A stretch of DNA of 64,000 bases from Hyaloraphidium curvatum SAG 235-1 (taxonomy: Eukaryota; Fungi; Monoblepharomycota), in the NCBI GenBank assembly GCA_025558095.1, contig JAIVFI010000011.1, positions 62,001 to 126,000 of the forward strand. Direction: 5' to 3'. Positions 37,775 to 46,220 of this stretch are shown in pieces. Under the pieces are notes generated by a model. The model did no database searches, had not been told where the DNA came from, and worked only from the letters and a program-made list of their open reading frames with translations. The position numbers were made by a program, and so were the translations under genes. Each line of letters begins with the position of its first letter. Positions within the stretch are counted from its first letter, which is position 1.

Positions 37775-38779
37775 TCATTCAACTTTTGCCCCCGACACAT
37801 GGTCCGATCCCGCCACGGGCACCTTCTCTTGCCAGCGCAGCTCCAGCACGGGAAACTCCCAGCCCCCGTAGAACCACCCCGCGTACCCCAGGTAATCGCC
37901 GTACATCTCCCCCGGAAACTCGACCAGCCCGCACTCGGCCTCCAGCAGCATCCCCCCGGGCACCGCCGCCTCCCCCGTCGACTTGGCCGACTCGGCCAGC
38001 AGGGTGAGCACCGCCTGCCCCACCTCCATCTCGGCCGCGCGGATCAGGAGCTCCGGGTGGCCGAAGGTGTGGTACAGCCCGACGGTGAACGAGAACCGAG
38101 GGATCCCTAGCTCGTCGTTGGGCTCCACGTGCACCACGTGGAACCCGTGGGAGGCGACGTCCGCGAGCAGCTTGGCGTCGCGCCCGTCCTCGGCCTCGCG
38201 GGGCGGCTTCTTCCTCCGCTTCTTTGGGAGCTTGCTCGGTTCCGCGGGGGCATAGCACCTCAGCACGTGCTCCTCCGCAAACTCCACCGAGTCCCCGAGC
38301 CTCAGCACGTCCGGCGAAAACACCCCGGGCTCGTTGCGCACCTCCCCCCTCCCGGGCGCCGTCACCGCCACCCACAGCCGCTCGAACCACCTGTCCTCCC
38401 GCGTCGGCACGGCCGTCAGCCCCAGCTTGGCCAGGGCGCCGGGTAAAGGCCGCATCCGCGCCTCGTGGCCCTCGTCCAGCACGGCGAGCACGGAAGCGCG
38501 GGGGGCGAGCGCGTACCCCCTTTCGCGGTCGCCGGGGGAGAGGGCCACGTTGCGTAGCAGGAGGTCGGCGGCGCACGGCGGGCAGAGGGGGAACGACGCG
38601 TCGGCGGGGGCGCAGAGGGTGCACGCGGCGGAGGCGGCGGGGAGGGCGCGGAAGGAGCGCAGGCGGCCTTCGAGGAGGTGCGCGCACGCGCGGGCGGCGC
38701 CGGGCGGGGTGGGCACGCCGCAGCGGGCACACGGCATGGGCGGGCCGTCGGCAGGTGCGATGGACGCGTTCGACGCCAT
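37775..38779 (-). CDS. Cys-rich N-terminus + DUF2314-like + DUF4262-like fusion protein, intronless
   Basis: CARC..CAH..CTLC..CPPC, then ERLWV....G.V.NEP....LRLGDSVEF..EHV, then HGFHVVHV......FSFTVGL..TFGHPELLI...VLELRW. Confidence 0.62.
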   Translation of the reverse strand: MASNASIAPADGPPMPCARCGVPTPPGAARACAHLLEGRLRSFRALPAASAACTLCAPADASFPLCPPCAADLLLRNVALSPGDRERGYALAPRASVLAVLDEGHEARMRPLPGALAKLGLTAVPTREDRWFERLWVAVTAPGRGEVRNEPGVFSPDVLRLGDSVEFAEEHVLRCYAPAEPSKLPKKRRKKPPREAEDGRDAKLLADVASHGFHVVHVEPNDELGIPRFSFTVGLYHTFGHPELLIRAAEMEVGQAVLTLLAESAKSTGEAAVPGGMLLEAECGLVEFPGEMYGDYLGYAGWFYGGWEFPVLELRWQEKVPVAGSDHVSGAKVE

Positions 38780-38937
38780 GGACGCCCGGCGTGGGAGACG
38801 GAATGCGGTGGGCGGTGTTGGCGGTCGGGTGGACCCGTCTTGGTGCCGCAACTCCGGACCCCTTCTATTCACCTGTCTCACCTGTTCCCGCCCATGGAGC
38901 CGCGACATCGACGAACGACGTCCAAGCAGCGCCTTCA

Positions 38938-40510
38938 TCACGCCCCGCACCCCGCATCCATCGTCACCGCGATCCCCAGCGGCCTCAGTATCCCCCACAG
39001 CCCCACCCCCAGCGTGAACAGCGTCGCCGCGACGGTCCGCACGGTGCCGTAGCCCGCCGCCAGCCCGAGGATCCTGCTCCTGTACCGCGGCCCGTTCTCG
39101 GCGAGCGGGGTGAGGGAGGCCAGCCGGTCGCGCCAGCGCTGGGATGCATCGGAAGTAGGGGCGAGGGAGAGCATCTGCGAGAGGAGCGAGGCGGCGGAGG
39201 CGTAGGTCGCCGAGACGGTTTCGATCTCGCCGTTGACCTGCGCGCAGTTCACGAGGCCGAAGAGCAGACCCAGGCCGACGTAGCCGAGGAACGAGAGCGC
39301 GTAGGCGGGGATGCACGATCCGGCAGCGAGGTTGACCACCATGGCGAACAAGGCCGTGGCGAGGTTGGTGGCGCGGAGCACAAAGGCGGACTCGATGATC
39401 TGCCGCTGGGAGAGCCACGCGGAGGCGAGGCACGCGTGCAGGCGGAACTCGAGGTTGCCAGATAAAGGTGCGGGGCCGGTCGGTTTCTCTCCTAGCGGTG
39501 ACACCGGGTCGTGGTGGTGGTTGAGCGGCTGGGCTTGCGAGGTGGAAAACAGTCCCCGCTGTGCGTCCCGGAGCAGCTCGCCAAGGGCGAGCGACACGGC
39601 CCGGCCCCGAAGCCGGCTTTTGAGGGCGTCGAGGTCCGAGTTCTCGGCGTTGAACACGGGGAGGTGGCTGAAGAGGGTTTGGTTGACGCACAGCAGAACT
39701 ACGGCGGGCGGGTGGCGAGAATCAGCACCAACGCAGCTGGCACCCATCCAGTGCCACCCGACCTAGCAGGCTGCCCGAAAGTGCACCCCACCACGTGCCC
39801 CAGAACCCCGGCACCGCCGCCACGGGGTTCCACGCCGCGCAGAACAGCGAAAAGGCGAACGCCGCGGCCGTCAGCACCACGCGGAGGTTCTTGGCGGTGA
39901 ACGCCCTGGCCACGGTCCCCTTGCCGCGCGCCAGGCAGGCCGGGCAGGGGCACGCCCCGTCGCCGTCCTCGTGCCGCAGGAGCGGCGGCGCGGCCCCGGG
40001 ACGGGCCAGCTCGGCGTAGCGGAGGAGCAGGGCGAGCGGGTTGCCGGTCTGGTCGGCGTGGCCCATTGCGGCGAGGAACGGGTGGTCGCGGGTCATCGCG
40101 ACGACGACGGGGGTGGCGTACACGGCGACCAGCGCGATCGTGGCGGCGACCTTTTCGGCCGTCGAAGAGGACGCGCCGTACGCCCACACGCCGGCCAGCG
40201 AGAGCGACAGCACGGCGGCGGCGGCGGGCAGCGACCGCGCGATGAGCCGCCGCGACCATCCCGCGCCGGCGGCCTGCGCAGAATAGACCGCGGCCAGCGG
40301 GGGGAACTCGGCGCGCAGGAACGCGAGCAGCTCCTCCCGCGACACGCTCTTCTCCCGCCACAGGGCGGGGAACGGGCCCGCGTCGACGGCGGGCGATGCG
40401 GCGAGCAGCAGCGCGGGCGGGGCGGAGGGGACCGCGAGCGGCGACGGGAAGAGGGCGAGCCAGGACGCGTCGGAGCGGTGCCATGCGGGCTCCGGGCCCT
40501 CCGAGCCCAT
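38938..40510 (-). CDS. 7-TM membrane protein, gustatory-receptor-like (7TMIC/GRL) architecture, copy A
   Basis: Two ORFs joined by a GT-AG intron (about 39699-39762). Seven hydrophobic segments arranged as pairs with short loops 1-2, 3-4 and 5-6. Paralogous to 43826-45375. Confidence 0.7.
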
Positions 40511-40591
40511 CGCGGAGAACGCGGTTGCTGGGGTTCCGAATCCCTTTGTCGCCCGCACCCCTAGGCGATTTTGGCTGGACTCACCAAAGGC

Positions 40592-41524
40592 ATGACGCCA
40601 AAGCCGCTGCAAAACCAGACGGCGCTCGTGACGGGCGCGTCGTCCGGGATCGGCCTCGCCGTTGCGCACCGCCTCGCGCGTCTGGGCGCGTCGGTGACAC
40701 TCGTCGCGCGCGACCCGGGGCGACTGAAAGCCGCCGCCGAAGCGATAAAGCGCGACGCACCGGACGCCCAAATCGAATGCATCGCACGGGACCTGACGCT
40801 CATGTCCTCCGCCGCCGAGCTGGGCTCGCGGGTCGCGCCGCCGGACATCCTCGTGCACTGCGCCGGACTCATGCTGCCCGCGCGCACGCTCACCCCCGAA
40901 TCCGTCGAGACCGTGTTCGCGATCCAGTTCCTCGCGCGGTACCTGCTCGACACGCGGCTCGCCGCGCGGCTCCCCGCGGGCGCGAGGGTGGTCTCGGTGT
41001 CGGCCGGCGGGTGCTACGCGTTCCCGCTGCCGTGGGACAACCTGCAGGGCGAGAAGCACTACGACGGGGTGAGGCAGCTGCAGGTGGAGTCCGTGTGCAA
41101 CGACATGCTGGTGCTCGAGATGCGGGAAAGGTGGAGGGGGGCGAGGTGGTACTGCTACGGGCCCGGCTACGTCGCGGGCACGGGGCTGCAGAGGGAAATG
41201 GGCGGTATGCTGAGGTTCGCGAGCGCGACGTTCGGCAGGATGGTCTCGTACCCGTTGGAGAAGGCCGCGGACGGCGTCGTGCGGCTGTGCATGCAGGCGG
41301 AGGAGGGGCCGCCGCTGCAGGGCAGGATGTACGGGCGCAAGGTGGTGGAAAACCGGCCGTCGGCGTTTGCGGGGGATCCGGAAAACAGGCGGAAGCTGAT
41401 GGGGGTTGCTGAGTCGCTAGTGCAGGATGCGCTGGCGAGGAGCAGCAACGAGGAGGGCACTCGTGGCGCTCCTTCGTGGTTCGGCAGGACAGAGCAACGT
41501 ACTGTCGTCGAAGCGGCCAACTAG
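40592..41524 (+). CDS. Short-chain dehydrogenase/reductase, retinol-dehydrogenase-like, atypical active site
   Basis: ALVTGASSGIG, DILVHCAG, E.VFA.Q and RVVSVS. The expected YxxxK is replaced by LQVES. Confidence 0.85.
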   Translation: MTPKPLQNQTALVTGASSGIGLAVAHRLARLGASVTLVARDPGRLKAAAEAIKRDAPDAQIECIARDLTLMSSAAELGSRVAPPDILVHCAGLMLPARTLTPESVETVFAIQFLARYLLDTRLAARLPAGARVVSVSAGGCYAFPLPWDNLQGEKHYDGVRQLQVESVCNDMLVLEMRERWRGARWYCYGPGYVAGTGLQREMGGMLRFASATFGRMVSYPLEKAADGVVRLCMQAEEGPPLQGRMYGRKVVENRPSAFAGDPENRRKLMGVAESLVQDALARSSNEEGTRGAPSWFGRTEQRTVVEAAN

Positions 41525-41983
41525 AATCCAGGGCTGCGACAACCGGCAATCGCGGGCCTCGCCTCAGAGACGGCACGCGTGTCTATAAGTCAAATCTCCT
41601 TTACAGGTCCAAGAGAAGCGTGAGTTGGTCCGTCCGGGCGCGCGGGCTACGTCCCGCCCAATGCTCACAGCGGTCCGTCCGCCGCGGTCACGCCTCAAAT
41701 ATCAAGTGAGGATTTCCGAGCACATCAATCTGAGGTGCAAACTCCTGCGCGCTATGTCGGCGGGGTGATGTTCGGAGGAATGGGGCGGAGGCACAGCAGA
41801 CCCTTCCAACACCGCCACATACGGCCATACCCTTCGGCGTGCGCCGCTTCTTGGAATCCGCACAGCCGCGGAGCGCAGAGCAATAAATGGTGGCCGACCT
41901 GCTCGCTGGGGAGGGACAGCAACGCAACCCCCTTCTTCCCTCCAAGTCACGCCGCCAACGCGACCGACCCGAACTCCACCGCC

Positions 41984-42535
41984 ATGAAATTCTCCACCGC
42001 CTTCGCCCTCTTTGCCGCCGCCCTCCTCCCCGGCGCTCTCGCCGCCGGCCCCTCCGCCCGAGGCGCTCCGGCCCTCCCCGCCGTCCCCCCACCCCGCAGC
42101 AGCGAGCTCGCGCCCCGCTCCTTCCCGCCCCTCCCCCCTCCTCCCGCCGGGCAGTTCTGGACGTGGCCAACGGGCTGCTATCCCCAGTCGGTCCCCACCA
42201 ACATGATCTGCTCCATCGTGCAGAACTGCACCTACACCGGCGCCGCGGTGGTCGCGCAGTTCCCCGGCACCTCCTGCGACACGTGGTACCCCCGGTGGTG
42301 CGGGTGCTTCGACGACCCGTCGACCAACTTCTACCCCGGTTCGGACCCGAGCAACGCGCTGTTTGGCGTTTCGGACAGCTACTGGACCTTCGTCGGGTGC
42401 GCGGCGCCGGATGCAGGCTGCCCGAGCAAGCCGGACGGGACGGCGCCGCTGGCGACGTACCACGGGAAAACGGACAAGAATGCCGAGTGTCCGGCGGGGC
42501 AGGAGGGGCTGTGGTGCGGGTACAAGTTGACGTGA
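41984..42535 (+). CDS. Small secreted Cys-rich protein
   Basis: Signal peptide MKFSTAFALFAAALLPGALA, Pro-rich spacer, and a mature region with 10 Cys and many Trp/Tyr. Confidence 0.78.
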   Translation: MKFSTAFALFAAALLPGALAAGPSARGAPALPAVPPPRSSELAPRSFPPLPPPPAGQFWTWPTGCYPQSVPTNMICSIVQNCTYTGAAVVAQFPGTSCDTWYPRWCGCFDDPSTNFYPGSDPSNALFGVSDSYWTFVGCAAPDAGCPSKPDGTAPLATYHGKTDKNAECPAGQEGLWCGYKLT

Positions 42536-42944
42536 GGTGTAGCTTCCGGGTGCCGCGCGCGCCGGCCCCAACATACCCGCTCTCGCTACAACTATGACCC
42601 AGGATGCTTTCGCATCGGTCGTCGATCCCATTCCGCGCTATGGCATAGCCTTCCCGTCCCAGACCATCAACGCTAGGGGGACACAATCTTTTCCCTTGCA
42701 CTTGGCTGAAGACCTAGGTGTGCATCAGCGAGTCAAACTCGGTCAGCTTCCACCAATCTCAGCGTCGTGGATGTCTCGTGATGGATACATTCTCTCGCGG
42801 CGAGGCATAGCCGGCGGAACCATTGCGTAGAGGCACGCGCCTCGCCCCCACCGGGGAGAGAACCTCGATACTCCGGGCGGGCGGCTATTTCTCTTCAGCA
42901 CCGGCAGACCACTGAGAACCAGCTCGATTGCCGTTCTTCCCGCG

Positions 42945-43691
42945 ATGGCGCCCAAGAACCTCCTCGTCCTCGGTGCCGCCGGCAACTTCGGGCGGCACCT
43001 CGCCGTCGGCGCGCTCGACGCCGGCCACGCCGTCTCGGTGCTCGTCCGCTCCCCGGACAAGCTCCCCGCCGAGATCCGCACCCGCGCCAAGGTGCTGCAG
43101 GCGGACCTCGCCGCCGCGTCGCCGGAGGAGCTGGCGGCGCTCATGGCGGGCCACGACGCGGTGCTGTGCTCCGCCGGCAACGTCACGCAGGGCGCCGAGT
43201 TCAACGCGCTGATCGACAACATCGCGTCGGCGGCCGAGCAGCTCCCGAAGGGCACGCCGGTGTGGTTCCTCGCCGGCGCCGCGCTGCTGGACTTCGATTC
43301 CGGGGGCAGGAAGGGCACGGACCTCCCAATCGTCGGCACGAAATTCGCCCCGCACGCCGCCAACCTGGCCCGCCTGGAGCGCAGCACCCTCGACTGGCGC
43401 CTGCTGTGCCCCGGGCCGATGGTCGACCGGCCCGCGGTGCCGCAGGAGGGAATCCGCGTCTCGGTGGACCGCTTGCCTGTGGACCTGCCCTGGGTGGGAT
43501 CCTACGTCGGCTGGCTGCCGGGGTTCGCGGTGCTGCCGCTGTTCGCGAGGGCGATACCCGAGGTCACGGTGCCGTACGCCAACGCGGCGGCGGTGGTGCT
43601 GGCCAATCTGGAACCGGGGGGTGAAATGTCGCGGAAGAGGGTGGGGCTGGCGCTGCCCCCGGGGATGCGGATGGTGAAGGAGGGTTACTAG
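42945..43691 (+). CDS. NAD(P)H-binding atypical SDR (BVR-B/flavin reductase-like), intronless
   Basis: LLVLGAAGNFG, GHAVSVLVRSPDKL, GHDAV, FLAGAA.L and S.LDW.LLCPG.M. Confidence 0.85.
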   Translation: MAPKNLLVLGAAGNFGRHLAVGALDAGHAVSVLVRSPDKLPAEIRTRAKVLQADLAAASPEELAALMAGHDAVLCSAGNVTQGAEFNALIDNIASAAEQLPKGTPVWFLAGAALLDFDSGGRKGTDLPIVGTKFAPHAANLARLERSTLDWRLLCPGPMVDRPAVPQEGIRVSVDRLPVDLPWVGSYVGWLPGFAVLPLFARAIPEVTVPYANAAAVVLANLEPGGEMSRKRVGLALPPGMRMVKEGY

Positions 43692-43825
43692 GGAATCGGG
43701 TGTGGTGGGACACGAAGGTCGAGGAGAGCCACAGGGATTCGAATGGCCATTGCACCCCACAGTCCCTCGGCTACTACACACGTCATCCGTTTTGCCGCCC
43801 ATTTTGCCTGTCCAACCATTCACGC

Positions 43826-45375
43826 TCACCCGCCGCACACGCACTCGATGGTGATGTCCACCTGCAGCGCCCTGAGCACCGTCCACAGCGCAAACGCCGC
43901 CGTCAGCGTCCCCCCCGCCGCCCTCCTCGCCATGCTCGCCGTCACGGGCACCCCCAGCAGCCTGGCCCCGGCACCGGCCACGTGCGCCTCGACCAGGTCG
44001 TGCAAGGCGGCGCGGTGCGCGAGGATGCGGTCCGCGAGGGGGGCGGGGGCGGGGGACGCGCGCGCGCGGGCGGCGAGGCGGGAGAGGGCGAGGGAGGCGG
44101 ATTTGATGGCCGCGGAGGTCTGGGAGATGCGGCCGTTGCCGTAGACCGCGTTGACGAGGGGGAAGAAGAGCGCATCGAGGCCCATGAGGAGGAGCGCGAC
44201 GGTGTAGACGGGTAGACAGCCGGCCGCGGTCTGCAGGACGGGGTGCGGAGGATCACCGACCGTTGCCGCAGGCCGCGCGGCGAACCTACGATGTAGACCA
44301 CCATGGCGATGGCTTCCGTCCCGAAAAAGAACCCGGCAAGCGCCACCATCTGCGGAAGCACGGTATCCTGCTGCCACCGCGCGGCCAGCAGAGGCACGAG
44401 GTCGAGGTACCAGCTCTCGCACGGCGCCGCCGGCCCTTCAACGCCACCGTCCACCATCCCACGGAAGTGCGCGACGAGCGAGTCCAGCGCGTGTCCCAGT
44501 GCGCGGCCTTCCAGCCGCCGCTCCAGGTCCCTCGCGACCAGGTTGTCCGTCATCGCGGCGCCGCCGAGCACGCTGACGAACTCGTTGTCCAGCAGCAGGG
44601 GGATCAGAAGGACGCCGGCGACAGCCCAGGGCGTCGTCCAGAGCTGGCCGCCGAGGGTCACCAAAAAGGTGAAGTAACGGGTGATATACATGAAGCAGAA
44701 GAGCAGAAGGATAATCGCCAGCGCCGCGACGCGCGCGGTTGCAGCGCGCCGGGGAACGGACCCGGCGCATTCGGCCCGCGGGCAGCAGCATCCGAGCAGG
44801 TCGTCGGCGCGATGCTGCAGAAGCAGGAAGGGGCTTTCCGAATCCTCGCTGGCAGATTTCCTTAGCATGTTGTAGCGCCAGAAGACGGCCTCGGGCCAGC
44901 CGTCCAGCGTGGCAACCTTGACGAACCCTCCCGAGACGGTGTCCGGCTTGCGCTCCTCCGGGTCGTCCCGCCGCGGCTGCCGGCCCCCGCTCCACGCGAG
45001 CCACCTCATCAGCGGCACCCCGAACGAGTACGCCGCATTTTCGAATGCGATCACGGCCACCGTCACGGCGAGCTGCCTCTGCCCGAAGCCGTGCGCGGGC
45101 CCGTTGATCCACAGGAAGGGCAGCATGACGGTGGCAGTGAACACATGGCCCACCGCGACGCGCAACAACAGCTGCGCGGAGTGCGGCGCCAGCGCCAACG
45201 AGGTCCACGTGAGCCCGCGGAGCACGCGGTTCGCGGAGGCGGCGTCGAGGGCCGCGGCGGAGGTCAGTGGCCGCGCGCGCCGCGCGTCGCGCCCGGGGTC
45301 CGGCGGCGGCAGCGGCGCGGGCAGGAGGCACAACGCTTCCTCCGGAGTTAGGAATCCAATGTCGGGCGCGTCCAT
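43826..45375 (-). CDS. 7-TM membrane protein, gustatory-receptor-like (7TMIC/GRL) architecture, copy B
   Basis: Two ORFs joined by an intron (about 44233-44286). Seven hydrophobic segments. Shares H..D..C.C..C, W.T.W, R.L..RA...AL..L, L...W, A.VV....GC.P.Y, LVN...N..I, R.LG and LW..LR.L...T...C with 38938-40510. Confidence 0.7.
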
Positions 45376-45642: not shown

Positions 45643-46220
45643 TCAATTACGCCCGTGGAGTGTGTTCAATGGTCGAGACGTCACGACCACTGTCTGCAAG
45701 TTTCCTTGTGCCCTGCCCACGCAGCCCTCTGGCACACTCGGCCCCGCAGTACCGCGTGACCTTGCACCCCCCGCAGCGCCGCAGCCGATCGCCCTCGGCG
45801 CCACACCGGTCGCACGAGTCGGGCGCGATACCCTTGCGCGAGGCCCTGAACTCCCTCCGCACCTGGGGAATGCTCGCACGGCGCCAGCGGCCCCGCGCAG
45901 GATGAAGGCCACCTTGTCCGCGTGGTGGACGAGGAAGCGCAGGTCGGGGTTGCTGTAGCGCCCGAACATCTCGAAAAACAGGAACACCGCCTCCCATGGG
46001 CGGAAGTTCTCCATCATCGCGTTGGTCAGGCCAAAAAACGAGGCAAACGCTCGGACCGCGTCCTTCGCAAAATCCGGATCGGGATTCGGAGGCGGGCTGG
46101 CGCCACGCGGGGGGAAAGAGCTCCGTGAGGGAATTGATGACGTACCCGGCGTCAGTCGCGGGAAACCCGAACATCGTGCAGTCGCCGCTCGTCCGCGTAC
46201 GCTGGAACAGCGCACCCTAA
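45643..46220 (-). pseudogene. Degraded MYND zinc-finger gene
   Basis: CDRC.....RLRRCGGCKVTRYCGAEC is followed by a 2-nt insertion (gagtgTGccag); the shifted frame continues QRAAWAGHKETC. Further frameshifts lie upstream. Confidence 0.72.

What the first reader, a model, noticed from the sequence alone, without database searches (positions are those of the whole stretch)
38938..45375. Candidate fungal family of gustatory/odorant-receptor-like 7-TM ion channels (two divergent paralogs)
Seen: two spliced genes (38938-40510, 43826-45375), each with seven hydrophobic segments and no signal peptide. Loops TM1-2, 3-4 and 5-6 are very short; loops TM2-3, 4-5 and 6-7 are long and Arg-rich, implying N-in/C-out topology, the inverse of GPCRs. 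After TM6 comes LVN...N..I, then a helix, then R(I/L)LG preceding a split TM7 with T...LW near the C-terminus. Known: this is the layout of insect GR/OR channels and their 7TMIC/GRL/DUF3537 relatives (A.VN.E after TM6, G.F before TM7a/7b). Inference: an expanded, fast-diverging chemosensory ligand-gated channel repertoire in an early-diverging fungus. This is my best candidate for an undescribed system in the window. The canonical TY....QF motif is not present.
Basis: partly seen in the sequence, partly recalled or inferred. Interest (0 to 1): 0.85.

Follow-up and report, generated by a model that had tools for sequence, protein, structure and literature searches.

The report
Fungal insect-like chemoreceptor channel family
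Two expressed genes of the aquatic fungus Hyaloraphidium curvatum belong to an undescribed family of roughly 450 very divergent seven-helix membrane proteins whose predicted fold matches the smell and taste receptor ion channels of insects; a repertoire of that size was so far known only from animals.

Summary
Both genes exist on the minus strand and are two-exon. Contigs of a public run lack exactly the two proposed introns, 39699-39762 and 44231-44289.

Each gene encodes a protein of about 500 aa with seven TM helices. No Pfam family matches.

They are two members of a very large family:
- A profile of 14 paralogs finds 454 cluster representatives at 50% identity.
- All 20 representatives sampled are Hyaloraphidium curvatum "hypothetical proteins".
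- One relative lies on a metagenome contig of different GC content.

An AlphaFold2 model of P0002 was built with 112 family rows (pLDDT 89.8). P0002 is a full-length paralog about 50% identical to gene 2.
- Foldseek and an exhaustive search of 48,161 PDB clusters both put insect OR/GR channels first (Z 11-12.7, 300-356 residues aligned).
- The model has long TM4-6 extensions and a TM7a/beta-hairpin/TM7b split.
- Charge bias supports an N-in, C-out topology.

TM1-6 evolve fastest (dN/dS 0.40). The pore-helix region is most constrained (0.10).

The following were not shown:
- sequence-level homology to 7tm_6, 7tm_7 or DUF3537
- the TY..QF motif
- tetramer formation
- any channel or chemosensory function

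First readers flagged this family in other windows of this genome; none was followed up.

The parts
38938..40510 (-). Gene 1, family member of about 502 aa (exon 1 39764-40510, intron 39699-39762, exon 2 38941-39696, stop 38938-38940)
   Evidence: Sequence and translations. Spliced contig of run X1 skips 39699-39762. Exons match the family profile at positions 19-276 and 286-516.
43826..45375 (-). Gene 2, family member of about 496 aa (exon 1 44290-45375, intron 44231-44289, exon 2 43829-44230, stop 43826-43828)
   Evidence: Spliced contig skips 44231-44289. Profile match at positions 16-387 and 390-516. About 50% identical to the full-length paralog P0002. The deposited model P0001 retains the intron and starts at an internal Met.
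39699..39762 (-). Intron of gene 1 (64 nt, phase 1, inside TM4)
   Evidence: GT..AG on the minus strand. Joint 39698>39763 in a contig.
44231..44289 (-). Intron of gene 2 (59 nt, phase 0, at the end of TM5)
   Evidence: GT..AG on the minus strand. Joint 44230>44290 in a contig.
39929..39973 (-). Gene 1 His/Asp/Cys cluster in the long TM2-TM3 loop (H-E-D-G-D-G-A-C-P-C-P-A-C); third Cys shifted by two positions relative to the family
   Evidence: Alignment to P0002 residues 216-231. H216, C224 and C226 are in 110/110 rows and C231 in 109/110.
44767..44814 (-). Gene 2 His/Asp/Cys cluster in the TM2-TM3 loop (H..DD...CCC....C)
38980..39144 (-). Gene 1 TM7a (39091-39144), hairpin linker with RILG (39052-39090), TM7b (38980-39051)
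   Evidence: Mapped from the P0002 model: helix 452-472, strands within 473-485, helix 486-509. Most conserved part of the family.
43868..44038 (-). Gene 2 TM7a (43979-44038), hairpin linker with RLLG (43940-43978), TM7b (43868-43939)
39313..39315 (-). Gene 1 invariant Cys of the short TM5-TM6 loop; its likely partner is the invariant C-tail Cys at 38947-38949
   Evidence: C395 in 110/110 rows, C520 in 108/109. Both lie on the low-charge (outer) side. Strands 395-397 and 513-515 pair in the model. The disulfide itself is inferred.
44216..44218 (-). Gene 2 invariant Cys of the TM5-TM6 loop; its likely partner is the C-tail Cys at 43835-43837
39232..39234 (-). Gene 1 invariant Asn just after TM6 (gene 2 equivalent: 44135-44137)
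   Evidence: N422 in 110/110 rows; mapping.

Best explanation
Both genes encode members of a family of about 450 genes that, in current databases, is almost confined to Hyaloraphidium curvatum. [quoted passage not shown] Shown or predicted here: a cytoplasmic N-terminus, seven TM helices, short outer loops, cytoplasmic extensions of TM4-6 packed with a TM7a helix into an anchor-like domain, and a beta-hairpin followed by the membrane helix TM7b. Inferred from the family it resembles: four subunits assemble through the anchor domain, the conserved TM7b lines a central pore, and the fast-evolving membrane parts of TM1-6 form a ligand pocket that differs between paralogs. On that reading the family would be a large repertoire of ligand-gated channels for sensing chemicals in the water. 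Two features are peculiar to this family. One is an invariant His/Asp/Cys3 cluster in the first intracellular loop, probably a metal site. The other is an invariant pair of outer-side cysteines, probably a disulfide tying the C-terminal tail to the TM5-6 loop.
For: Genes and splicing:
- Both genes are real and spliced as modelled.
- Both match the family profile over its full length.

Structure:
- The AlphaFold2 model of paralog P0002, made with 112 family rows, has mean pLDDT 89.8 and pTM 0.88. The single-sequence model was poor, pLDDT 44.
- Foldseek against the PDB: 8 of the top 10 hits are insect OR/GR (best E 0.015, probability 0.99, TM-score up to 0.48 by target).
- Exhaustive VIA-align over 48,161 PDB clusters: the top 5 are OR/GR, Z 11.2-11.7, with 301-339 residues aligned across model residues 60-511.
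- Second look: the top 14 are all OR/GR, Z 11.0-12.7, up to 356 of 375 target residues aligned. The first unrelated hit aligns only 133 residues.
- ESM Atlas fold search: a cnidarian cluster (TM 0.55/0.69, 362 residues aligned) and an arthropod cluster in which 10% of members carry DUF267. DUF267 occurs together with 7tm_7 in other clusters.
- Language-model neighbours among named clusters: DUF3537 (7 of 30, score 0.92), 7tm_7 and Trehalose_recp.
- Model elements match the published OR/GR description (10.1101/2023.08.30.555482; PMC12635824): a 48-residue TM6 helix (398-445), TM7a (452-472), hairpin strands within 473-485, and TM7b (486-509).
- From my own knowledge: the AlphaFold2 training cut-off (April 2018) precedes the first 7TMIC structure, 6C70, released 2018-08-22 (date). 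The fold is therefore not recalled from a template.

Topology:
- K+R counts next to the membrane are 9.45 on the side of the N-terminus and long loops, against 1.34 on the other side.

Evolution:
- Median pairwise identity is 27%. Column entropy is about 3.0-3.1 bits for TM1-5, 2.8 for TM6 and 1.7 for TM7b.
- dN/dS of close pairs is 0.20-0.42. By region it is 0.40 for TM1-6, 0.19 for the anchor helices, and 0.10 for hairpin, TM7b and tail.
Against: - No sequence-level link exists to any 7TMIC family: Pfam on the exons and on 14 members, a profile search of PDB sequences, and 7tm_7 and DUF3537 searched in the whole genome (the controls of those two searches rang nowhere, so they are weak).
- No Foldseek E-value reaches 1e-3. 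Z 11-12.7 lies under the tool's caution mark of about 13 for helical proteins, and rmsd is 5-6 A.
- The GR signature TY.....QF is absent.
- TM7b is bracketed by two nearly invariant Arg (R490, R508), unlike insect pores.
- TM4 is broken by a loop (299-306) before its cytoplasmic helix.
- Tetramer formation was not shown.
- The model is of a paralog, not of the two window genes.
- From general knowledge: the organism has no swimming stage, so the use of a large chemoreceptor set is not obvious.
- Recognition by the language model was low (1573), so those neighbours are leads only.
Confidence: 0.6

Rival explanations
1. The proteins have the 7TMIC fold but are not an environmental chemoreceptor repertoire. 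They would be channels or scaffolds with another role, for example self/non-self or pathogen recognition, sensing of internal metabolites, light or temperature, or work in internal membranes, as for non-chemosensory members of the superfamily.
For: The fold evidence is the same as for the best explanation. Non-chemosensory roles are discussed for superfamily members (PMC7746228). From general knowledge, the organism is non-motile. The invariant cytoplasmic His/Cys3 cluster suggests regulation from inside the cell. A first-reader note reports F-box/LRR genes paired head-to-head with family members elsewhere in the genome (s1-701813; untested).
Against: A set of about 450 paralogs with 27% median identity, with the fastest change in the membrane helices TM1-6, is the pattern of ligand-diversified receptor families rather than of a housekeeping channel.
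Confidence: 0.22
2. The resemblance to insect receptors is convergent or only approximate. The family would be an unrelated lineage-specific seven-helix protein, such as a transporter, a GPCR-like receptor or a structural membrane protein.
For: No sequence similarity to any 7TMIC family was found. Z-scores are under the caution mark for helical folds, rmsd is 5-6 A, and all Foldseek E-values are >= 0.015. The tetramer test gave no verdict.
Against: Every OR/GR cluster in the PDB ranks above all other membrane proteins in an exhaustive search, with 85-95% of the target aligned in order. No GPCR or transporter appears in the top 50 of either VIA-align list. The rare TM7a/hairpin/TM7b arrangement is reproduced. 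Independent language-model neighbours are DUF3537 and 7tm_7 clusters.
Confidence: 0.13
3. The family is a selfish or decaying repeat, such as a gene carried by a mobile element or a pseudogene swarm, and the two window genes are not functional.
For: Hundreds of copies are scattered over all contigs and many are intronless. A few copies carry in-frame stops.
Against: dN/dS is 0.2-0.4 in eight independent close pairs, and region-specific constraint goes down to 0.10. Nearly all copies have open frames. Both window genes are in spliced transcript-like contigs. Median identity of 27% is not a recent burst. The neighbouring genes in the window are ordinary.
Confidence: 0.03

Closest known systems
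Insect odorant and gustatory receptors (Orco, MhOR5, AgamOR28, AaegOR10, BmGr9, Gr43a, Gr64a; Pfam 7tm_6/7tm_7; Class-A 7TMICs)
   Same: Best structural matches over almost the whole chain (Z 10.6-12.7, 300-356 residues aligned). Seven TM helices, N-in topology, short outer loops, cytoplasmic helical extensions, and TM7a/hairpin/TM7b. A large and very divergent paralog set whose C-terminal pore region is the most conserved.
   Different: 7-10% identity in the structural alignments and no Pfam match. No TY.....QF motif. Longer N-terminal region (about 90 aa) and a longer first intracellular loop carrying a His/Asp/Cys3 cluster. TM4 is interrupted before its cytoplasmic helix. Two conserved Arg lie at the ends of TM7b. 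An invariant Cys pair lies on the outer side. The host is a fungus.
Fungal GRL candidates SpunGRL1 / SpalGRL1 of Spizellomyces (Benton et al. 2020, PMC7746228)
   Same: Early-diverging fungus, about 350-500 aa, seven TM, N-in, intracellular loops longer than extracellular ones. The TM7 motif is poorly kept in those proteins too (one of four positions).
   Different: Those are single-copy genes found by sequence similarity to GRL/DUF3537. Here there are about 450 copies with no detectable sequence similarity to the Pfam models. A direct comparison was not possible because their sequences could not be fetched by any tool.
Plant DUF3537 proteins (PF12056)
   Same: Nearest named language-model neighbours (7 of 30, score 0.92, 189 shared features). 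Same superfamily fold according to the literature.
   Different: No hmmscan match. Plants have 4-12 genes (PMC7746228).
PHTF-like Class-B 7TMICs (10.1101/2023.08.30.555482)
   Same: 7TMIC core with an enlarged TM2-TM3 intracellular loop. That paper reports 7TMICs in Chytridiomycota and Blastocladiomycota.
   Different: No match to any Pfam model at E <= 10, so none to a PHTF model if Pfam holds one. IL1 is only about 75-85 aa. Class assignment was not tested.

Membership tests
7TMIC superfamily (insect OR/GR, GRL, DUF3537) | Seven TM helices with the characteristic packing | tested here: met
   Model at pLDDT 89.8. All OR/GR PDB clusters rank first in an exhaustive search, with 300-356 residues aligned. 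This rests on a predicted model of paralog P0002, not of the window genes.
7TMIC superfamily (insect OR/GR, GRL, DUF3537) | Intracellular N-terminus, extracellular C-terminus | tested here: met
   Positive-inside count over 108 members: 9.45 against 1.34 K+R next to the membrane. The invariant Cys pair lies on the low-charge side. This is a prediction only; DeepTMHMM was not available.
7TMIC superfamily (insect OR/GR, GRL, DUF3537) | Extracellular loops shorter than intracellular loops | tested here: met
   Mean loop lengths are 5, 17 and 4 aa on the outer side, against 71, 73 and 65 aa on the inner side.
7TMIC superfamily (insect OR/GR, GRL, DUF3537) | Long TM4, TM5 and TM6 extending into the cytoplasm as an anchor domain | tested here: met
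   Helices 307-336, 347-364 and 421-445 (TM6 is one 48-residue helix, 398-445). TM4 is broken by a loop at 299-306, which is a deviation.
7TMIC superfamily (insect OR/GR, GRL, DUF3537) | Split TM7: cytoplasmic TM7a, beta-hairpin, membrane TM7b | tested here: met
   H452-472, strand residues within 473-485, H486-509. The feature is described in PMC12635824.
7TMIC superfamily (insect OR/GR, GRL, DUF3537) | N-terminal re-entrant helix (TM0) | tested here: inconclusive
   Helices 63-72 and 76-92 precede TM1 and are included in the structural alignments (model range starts at 59-78). Model coordinates could not be inspected.
7TMIC superfamily (insect OR/GR, GRL, DUF3537) | Sequence-profile similarity to 7tm_6, 7tm_7, Trehalose_recp or DUF3537 | tested here: not met
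   No hmmscan match at E <= 10. No OR/GR in the profile search of PDB sequences. Only language-model neighbours were found. Many accepted 7TMICs also fail this test (10.1101/2023.08.30.555482).
Insect/animal GR family (7tm_7) | TY.....QF motif in TM7b | tested here: not met
   The TM7b consensus is R..(7)..T.....W...R..G. Only a conserved Thr could correspond, and its positional equivalence was not tested.
7TMIC superfamily (insect OR/GR, GRL, DUF3537) | Homotetramer (or heterotetramer) with TM7b lining a central pore | tested here: inconclusive
   Four copies of residues 276-523 gave no verdict; the tool did not use the alignment.
7TMIC superfamily (insect OR/GR, GRL, DUF3537) | Ligand-gated cation conductance | not testable with these tools
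   Needs electrophysiology or calcium imaging.

The most novel reading that the evidence does not exclude
A fungus has independently built an animal-scale repertoire of about 450 genes of 7TMIC-type ligand-gated channels. It would be the first large expansion of this superfamily outside animals. It has its own additions: a cytoplasmic His/Cys3 metal or redox module in the first intracellular loop, and a disulfide-stapled C-terminal tail. The family would serve a non-motile planktonic cell as a chemical sense.
Probability: 0.45. Interest if true: 0.85.

Novelty: new variant of a known kind. Interest (0 to 1): 0.75.

Why it matters
Large, fast-diverging sets of 7TMIC receptors have been regarded as an animal, mainly arthropod, invention. 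Outside animals the superfamily is reported as one to a dozen genes per genome, and as a single candidate in two chytrids (PMC7746228).

A family of about 450 members in a 32-Mb fungal genome would show that such expansions arose more than once. It would offer hundreds of natural variants of one scaffold for studying ligand pockets and gating. It also raises the question of what a non-swimming aquatic fungus senses with them.

All members are deposited as "hypothetical protein", and many gene models are truncated or keep an intron. The family is therefore invisible to annotation-based surveys.

Tried and rejected
Each exon was used by reference, and the full-length paralog P0002 stood in for folding.
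- The single-sequence AlphaFold2 model of P0002 was unusable (pLDDT 44).
- Complex prediction with four copies of residues 276-523 gave no verdict (score 0.01, alignment not used, controls not run). It is evidence neither for nor against a tetramer.
- Pfam on the exons and on 14 members found nothing relevant.
- A profile search of PDB sequences gave only chance-level rows: Flycatcher1 at E 0.74 and an opsin at E 6.9.
- 7tm_7 and DUF3537 searched in the own genome found nothing, but the controls rang nowhere, so this is weak.
- The search for homologous proteins with the family alignment returned only two members, because word candidates were swamped. The C-terminal region search returned five.
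- The supplement of the 7TMIC preprint holds no species list.
- The tail of the 454 profile hits could not be seen, since only the best 150 are listed. Relatives in other fungi are therefore not excluded.
- Rejected: a transposon or pseudogene swarm (dN/dS 0.2-0.4).
- Rejected: an outer-side disulfide role for the His/Cys cluster of the TM2-3 loop. It lies on the positively charged, cytoplasmic side.
Full report
**What is in the sequence**

- Gene 1 runs from the ATG at 40510 to the stop at 38938-38940. It has a 64-nt GT..AG intron at 39699-39762 (phase 1).
- Gene 2 runs from the ATG at 45375 to the stop at 43826-43828. It has a 59-nt GT..AG intron at 44231-44289 (phase 0).

One public run, probably RNA, was found; its contigs carry adapter remnants. 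It holds contigs that skip exactly 39699-39762 and 44231-44289 and cover most of both genes. So both genes are transcribed and spliced as modelled.

The deposited product of gene 2 (P0001, 394 aa) starts at an internal Met and reads through the intron into a Pro/Ser/Arg-rich tail. It is a mis-model.

Every search used the exons by reference.

**Paralogy and family**

The C-terminal 133 residues of the two genes are 33% identical (E 6e-9). The N-terminal parts are only faintly alike.

Gene 2's first exon finds paralogs named "hypothetical protein [Hyaloraphidium curvatum]". One is the full-length P0002 (523 aa, 47-50% identity), whose sequence continues across the position of gene 2's intron exactly as the spliced model predicts.

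Searches of the window's own genome (32 Mb, 55 contigs):

| Query | Matches | First-look candidates (scored) |
|---|---|---|
| P0002 | 91 | 650 (82) |
| P0128, the metagenome-encoded relative described below | 103, many at new places | 610 (136) |

Most copies are intronless open frames of 490-550 codons. Some sit in tandem or inverted pairs.

A profile of 14 paralogs (A1) found 454 representatives of 50%-identity clusters:

| E-value threshold | Representatives |
|---|---|
| <= 1e-3 | 454 |
| <= 1e-10 | 404 |
| <= 1e-30 | 283 |

. All 20 representatives that I looked up are singletons from H. curvatum, all "hypothetical".

The same profile matches all four window exons collinearly. Gene 1 covers positions 19-276 and 286-516. 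Gene 2 covers positions 16-387 and 390-516. No further member lies in the window.

One representative (P0128) comes from a metagenome scaffold with 54% G+C. It has no DNA match to this genome and at most about 50% protein identity. At least one other organism therefore carries the family.

**Fold**

No Pfam family matches the exons or 14 members. A family profile finds no solved relative by sequence.

Folded alone, P0002 gave a useless model (pLDDT 44). With a 112-row family alignment (A2) it gave pLDDT 89.8 and pTM 0.88.

- Foldseek against the PDB put insect odorant and gustatory receptors in 8 of the first 10 places. The E-values are weak (>= 0.015), the probabilities reach 0.99, and TM-score by target is up to 0.48.
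- An exhaustive aligner that does not depend on Foldseek compared the model with 48,161 PDB cluster representatives. It ranked five OR/GR entries first (Z 11.2-11.7, 301-339 residues aligned over model residues 60-511). BmGr9 and Orco followed among short helical-bundle matches.
- In the second look, the first 14 rows are all OR/GR. Z is 11.0-12.7, and AaegOR10 aligns over 356 of 375 residues. Orco 6C70 is at Z 10.6. The first unrelated row aligns only 133 residues to the cytoplasmic bundle.
- The ESM Atlas fold search gives a cnidarian cluster (TM 0.55/0.69, 362 aligned). It also gives an arthropod cluster in which 10% of members carry DUF267.
- Among named clusters, the language-model neighbours are DUF3537 (7 of 30) and 7tm_7/Trehalose_recp/DUF267 clusters. 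Recognition was low, so these are leads only.

The Z values are under the tool's caution mark for helical proteins. The coverage, the sequential order and the fact that every 7TMIC cluster outranks every other membrane protein make chance unlikely.

From my own knowledge, the AlphaFold2 weights were trained on structures released up to April 2018. That is before the first structure of this fold (6C70, released 2018-08-22).

**Anatomy compared with the published definition**

The 7TMIC features are listed in 10.1101/2023.08.30.555482 and PMC12635824. In P0002 numbering the model gives:

| Element | Residues |
|---|---|
| N-terminal helices | 63-72, 76-92 |
| TM1 | 95-118 |
| TM2 | 125-157 |
| Long loop (disordered 150-190, then a confident segment) | 158-231 |
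| TM3 | 232-261 |
| TM4 | 279-298 |
| Short break | 299-306 |
| Cytoplasmic helix | 307-336 |
| Cytoplasmic start of TM5 | 347-364 |
| TM5 | 368-393 |
| Four-residue outer loop | 394-397 |
| TM6, a single 48-residue helix reaching into the cytoplasm | 398-445 |
| TM7a | 452-472 |
| Linker with paired strand residues | 473-485 |
| TM7b | 486-509 |
| Tail; its strand 513-515 pairs with 395-397 | 510-523 |

. This reproduces the anchor domain and the TM7a/hairpin/TM7b split. Gene 1's intron falls inside TM4 and gene 2's falls at the end of TM5.

**Topology**

Over 108 full-length members, the residues next to the membrane carry 9.45 Lys+Arg on the side of the N-terminus and the long loops. The side of the short loops and the C-tail carries 1.34.

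**Family-specific features**

- H216, C224 and C226 are in 110 of 110 rows, C231 in 109 of 110, and D220 in 104 of 110. They form H-x3-D-x3-C-x-C-x4-C in the cytoplasmic TM2-3 loop. I infer a metal (zinc) or redox site.
- Gene 2 has this spacing. Gene 1 has the third Cys two positions earlier.
- C395 (TM5-6 loop) and C520 (tail) are invariant and lie on the outer side. I infer a disulfide.
- Also nearly invariant are N422 just after TM6, R319, G481, R490, T498, R508 and G511.
- The GR motif TY.....QF is absent.

**Evolutionary pattern**

Median pairwise identity is 27%. The closest pairs have dN/dS of 0.20-0.42.

| Region | Column entropy (bits) |
|---|---|
| TM1-5 | 3.0-3.1 |
| TM6 | 2.8 |
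| Anchor helices | 2.3-2.7 |
| Hairpin | 2.1 |
| TM7b | 1.7 |

| Region | dN/dS, summed over eight independent pairs |
|---|---|
| TM1-6 membrane helices | 0.40 |
| Anchor helices and TM7a | 0.19 |
| Hairpin, TM7b and tail | 0.10 |

So the genes are under purifying selection. The membrane helices that form the ligand pocket in insect receptors change fastest. The presumed pore and assembly parts change slowest. The 7TMIC preprint reports the same conservation pattern for the superfamily.

**Mechanism**

- Shown: expressed, spliced genes; a very large and divergent family; a predicted 7TMIC-type fold and topology; region-specific constraint.
- Inferred: tetramer formation through the anchor domain; a pore lined by TM7b; ligand binding in TM1-6; a chemosensory role.
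- The tetramer test gave no verdict.
- The two conserved Arg at the ends of TM7b differ from insect pores. They might change ion selectivity or pair with the acidic position 517. This is speculation.

**Comparison with what is known, and novelty**

Fungal members of the superfamily are reported as single candidates in two Spizellomyces species (PMC7746228). They are also reported as unspecified Chytridiomycota/Blastocladiomycota proteins in a structural screen. Plants have 4-12 DUF3537 genes.

No paper in the library mentions Hyaloraphidium together with such receptors, and no 7TMIC paper reports a fungal expansion.

I file the family as a new, sequence-orphan variant within the 7TMIC kind on the basis of fold. 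Membership by common descent is not established.

Other first-reader notes flagged the same family in other windows of this genome, for example nine copies in 64 kb. None had been followed up.

Noticed in passing
window 43942-45375 (protein P0001): The deposited gene model of gene 2 starts at an internal Met, so it lacks the N-terminus and TM1. It also retains the 59-nt intron and ends in a spurious Pro/Ser/Arg-rich tail. Ten sampled family members of 265-389 aa are probably similar truncated models.
   Followed up: partly
L068:1-1231 (ENA metagenome scaffold, ERZ28593542): A family member on a 2.9-kb contig with 54% G+C. It is at most about 50% identical to any copy in this genome and has no DNA match. 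It has an in-frame stop at 1124-1126 and a frame change near 155-168. Next to it lies an SNF2-like gene. This is evidence that another organism carries the family.
   Followed up: partly
G000 C39:45261-50510; C9:734008-739157; C14:38282-41825; C6:171259-174534; C22:532816-535528: Family members lie in tandem or inverted pairs. Extra copies appeared on the flanks of loci L002, L012, L020 and L025.
   Followed up: no
window 40571-41524 (+): A short-chain dehydrogenase-like ORF is divergently oriented about 60-80 bp from gene 1's start. It is covered by a transcript-like contig (40637-41518).
   Followed up: no
window 42945-43691 (+): A 248-aa ORF with an N-terminal NAD(P)-binding Gly motif (NmrA/atypical SDR-like) lies between the two family genes. 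Transcript-like contigs cover 42116-43031 and 43234-43723.
   Followed up: no
window 37775-38780 (-): The gene downstream of gene 1 has a Cys-rich stretch followed by segments that look like bacterial DUF-type domains. In this G+C-rich DNA its long ORF (37775-39691) runs on in another frame across exon 2 of gene 1.
   Followed up: no
window 45643-46215 (-): An ORF with a MYND-type zinc-finger-like Cys pattern lies upstream of gene 2.
   Followed up: no
family alignment A2, P0002 residues 20-62: A conserved N-terminal cytoplasmic motif, (A/E)EWL.L.P.P ... DPA...R...PLT, is modelled with confidence (pLDDT 79-97). I know of no counterpart in insect receptors. Its role is unknown.
   Followed up: no
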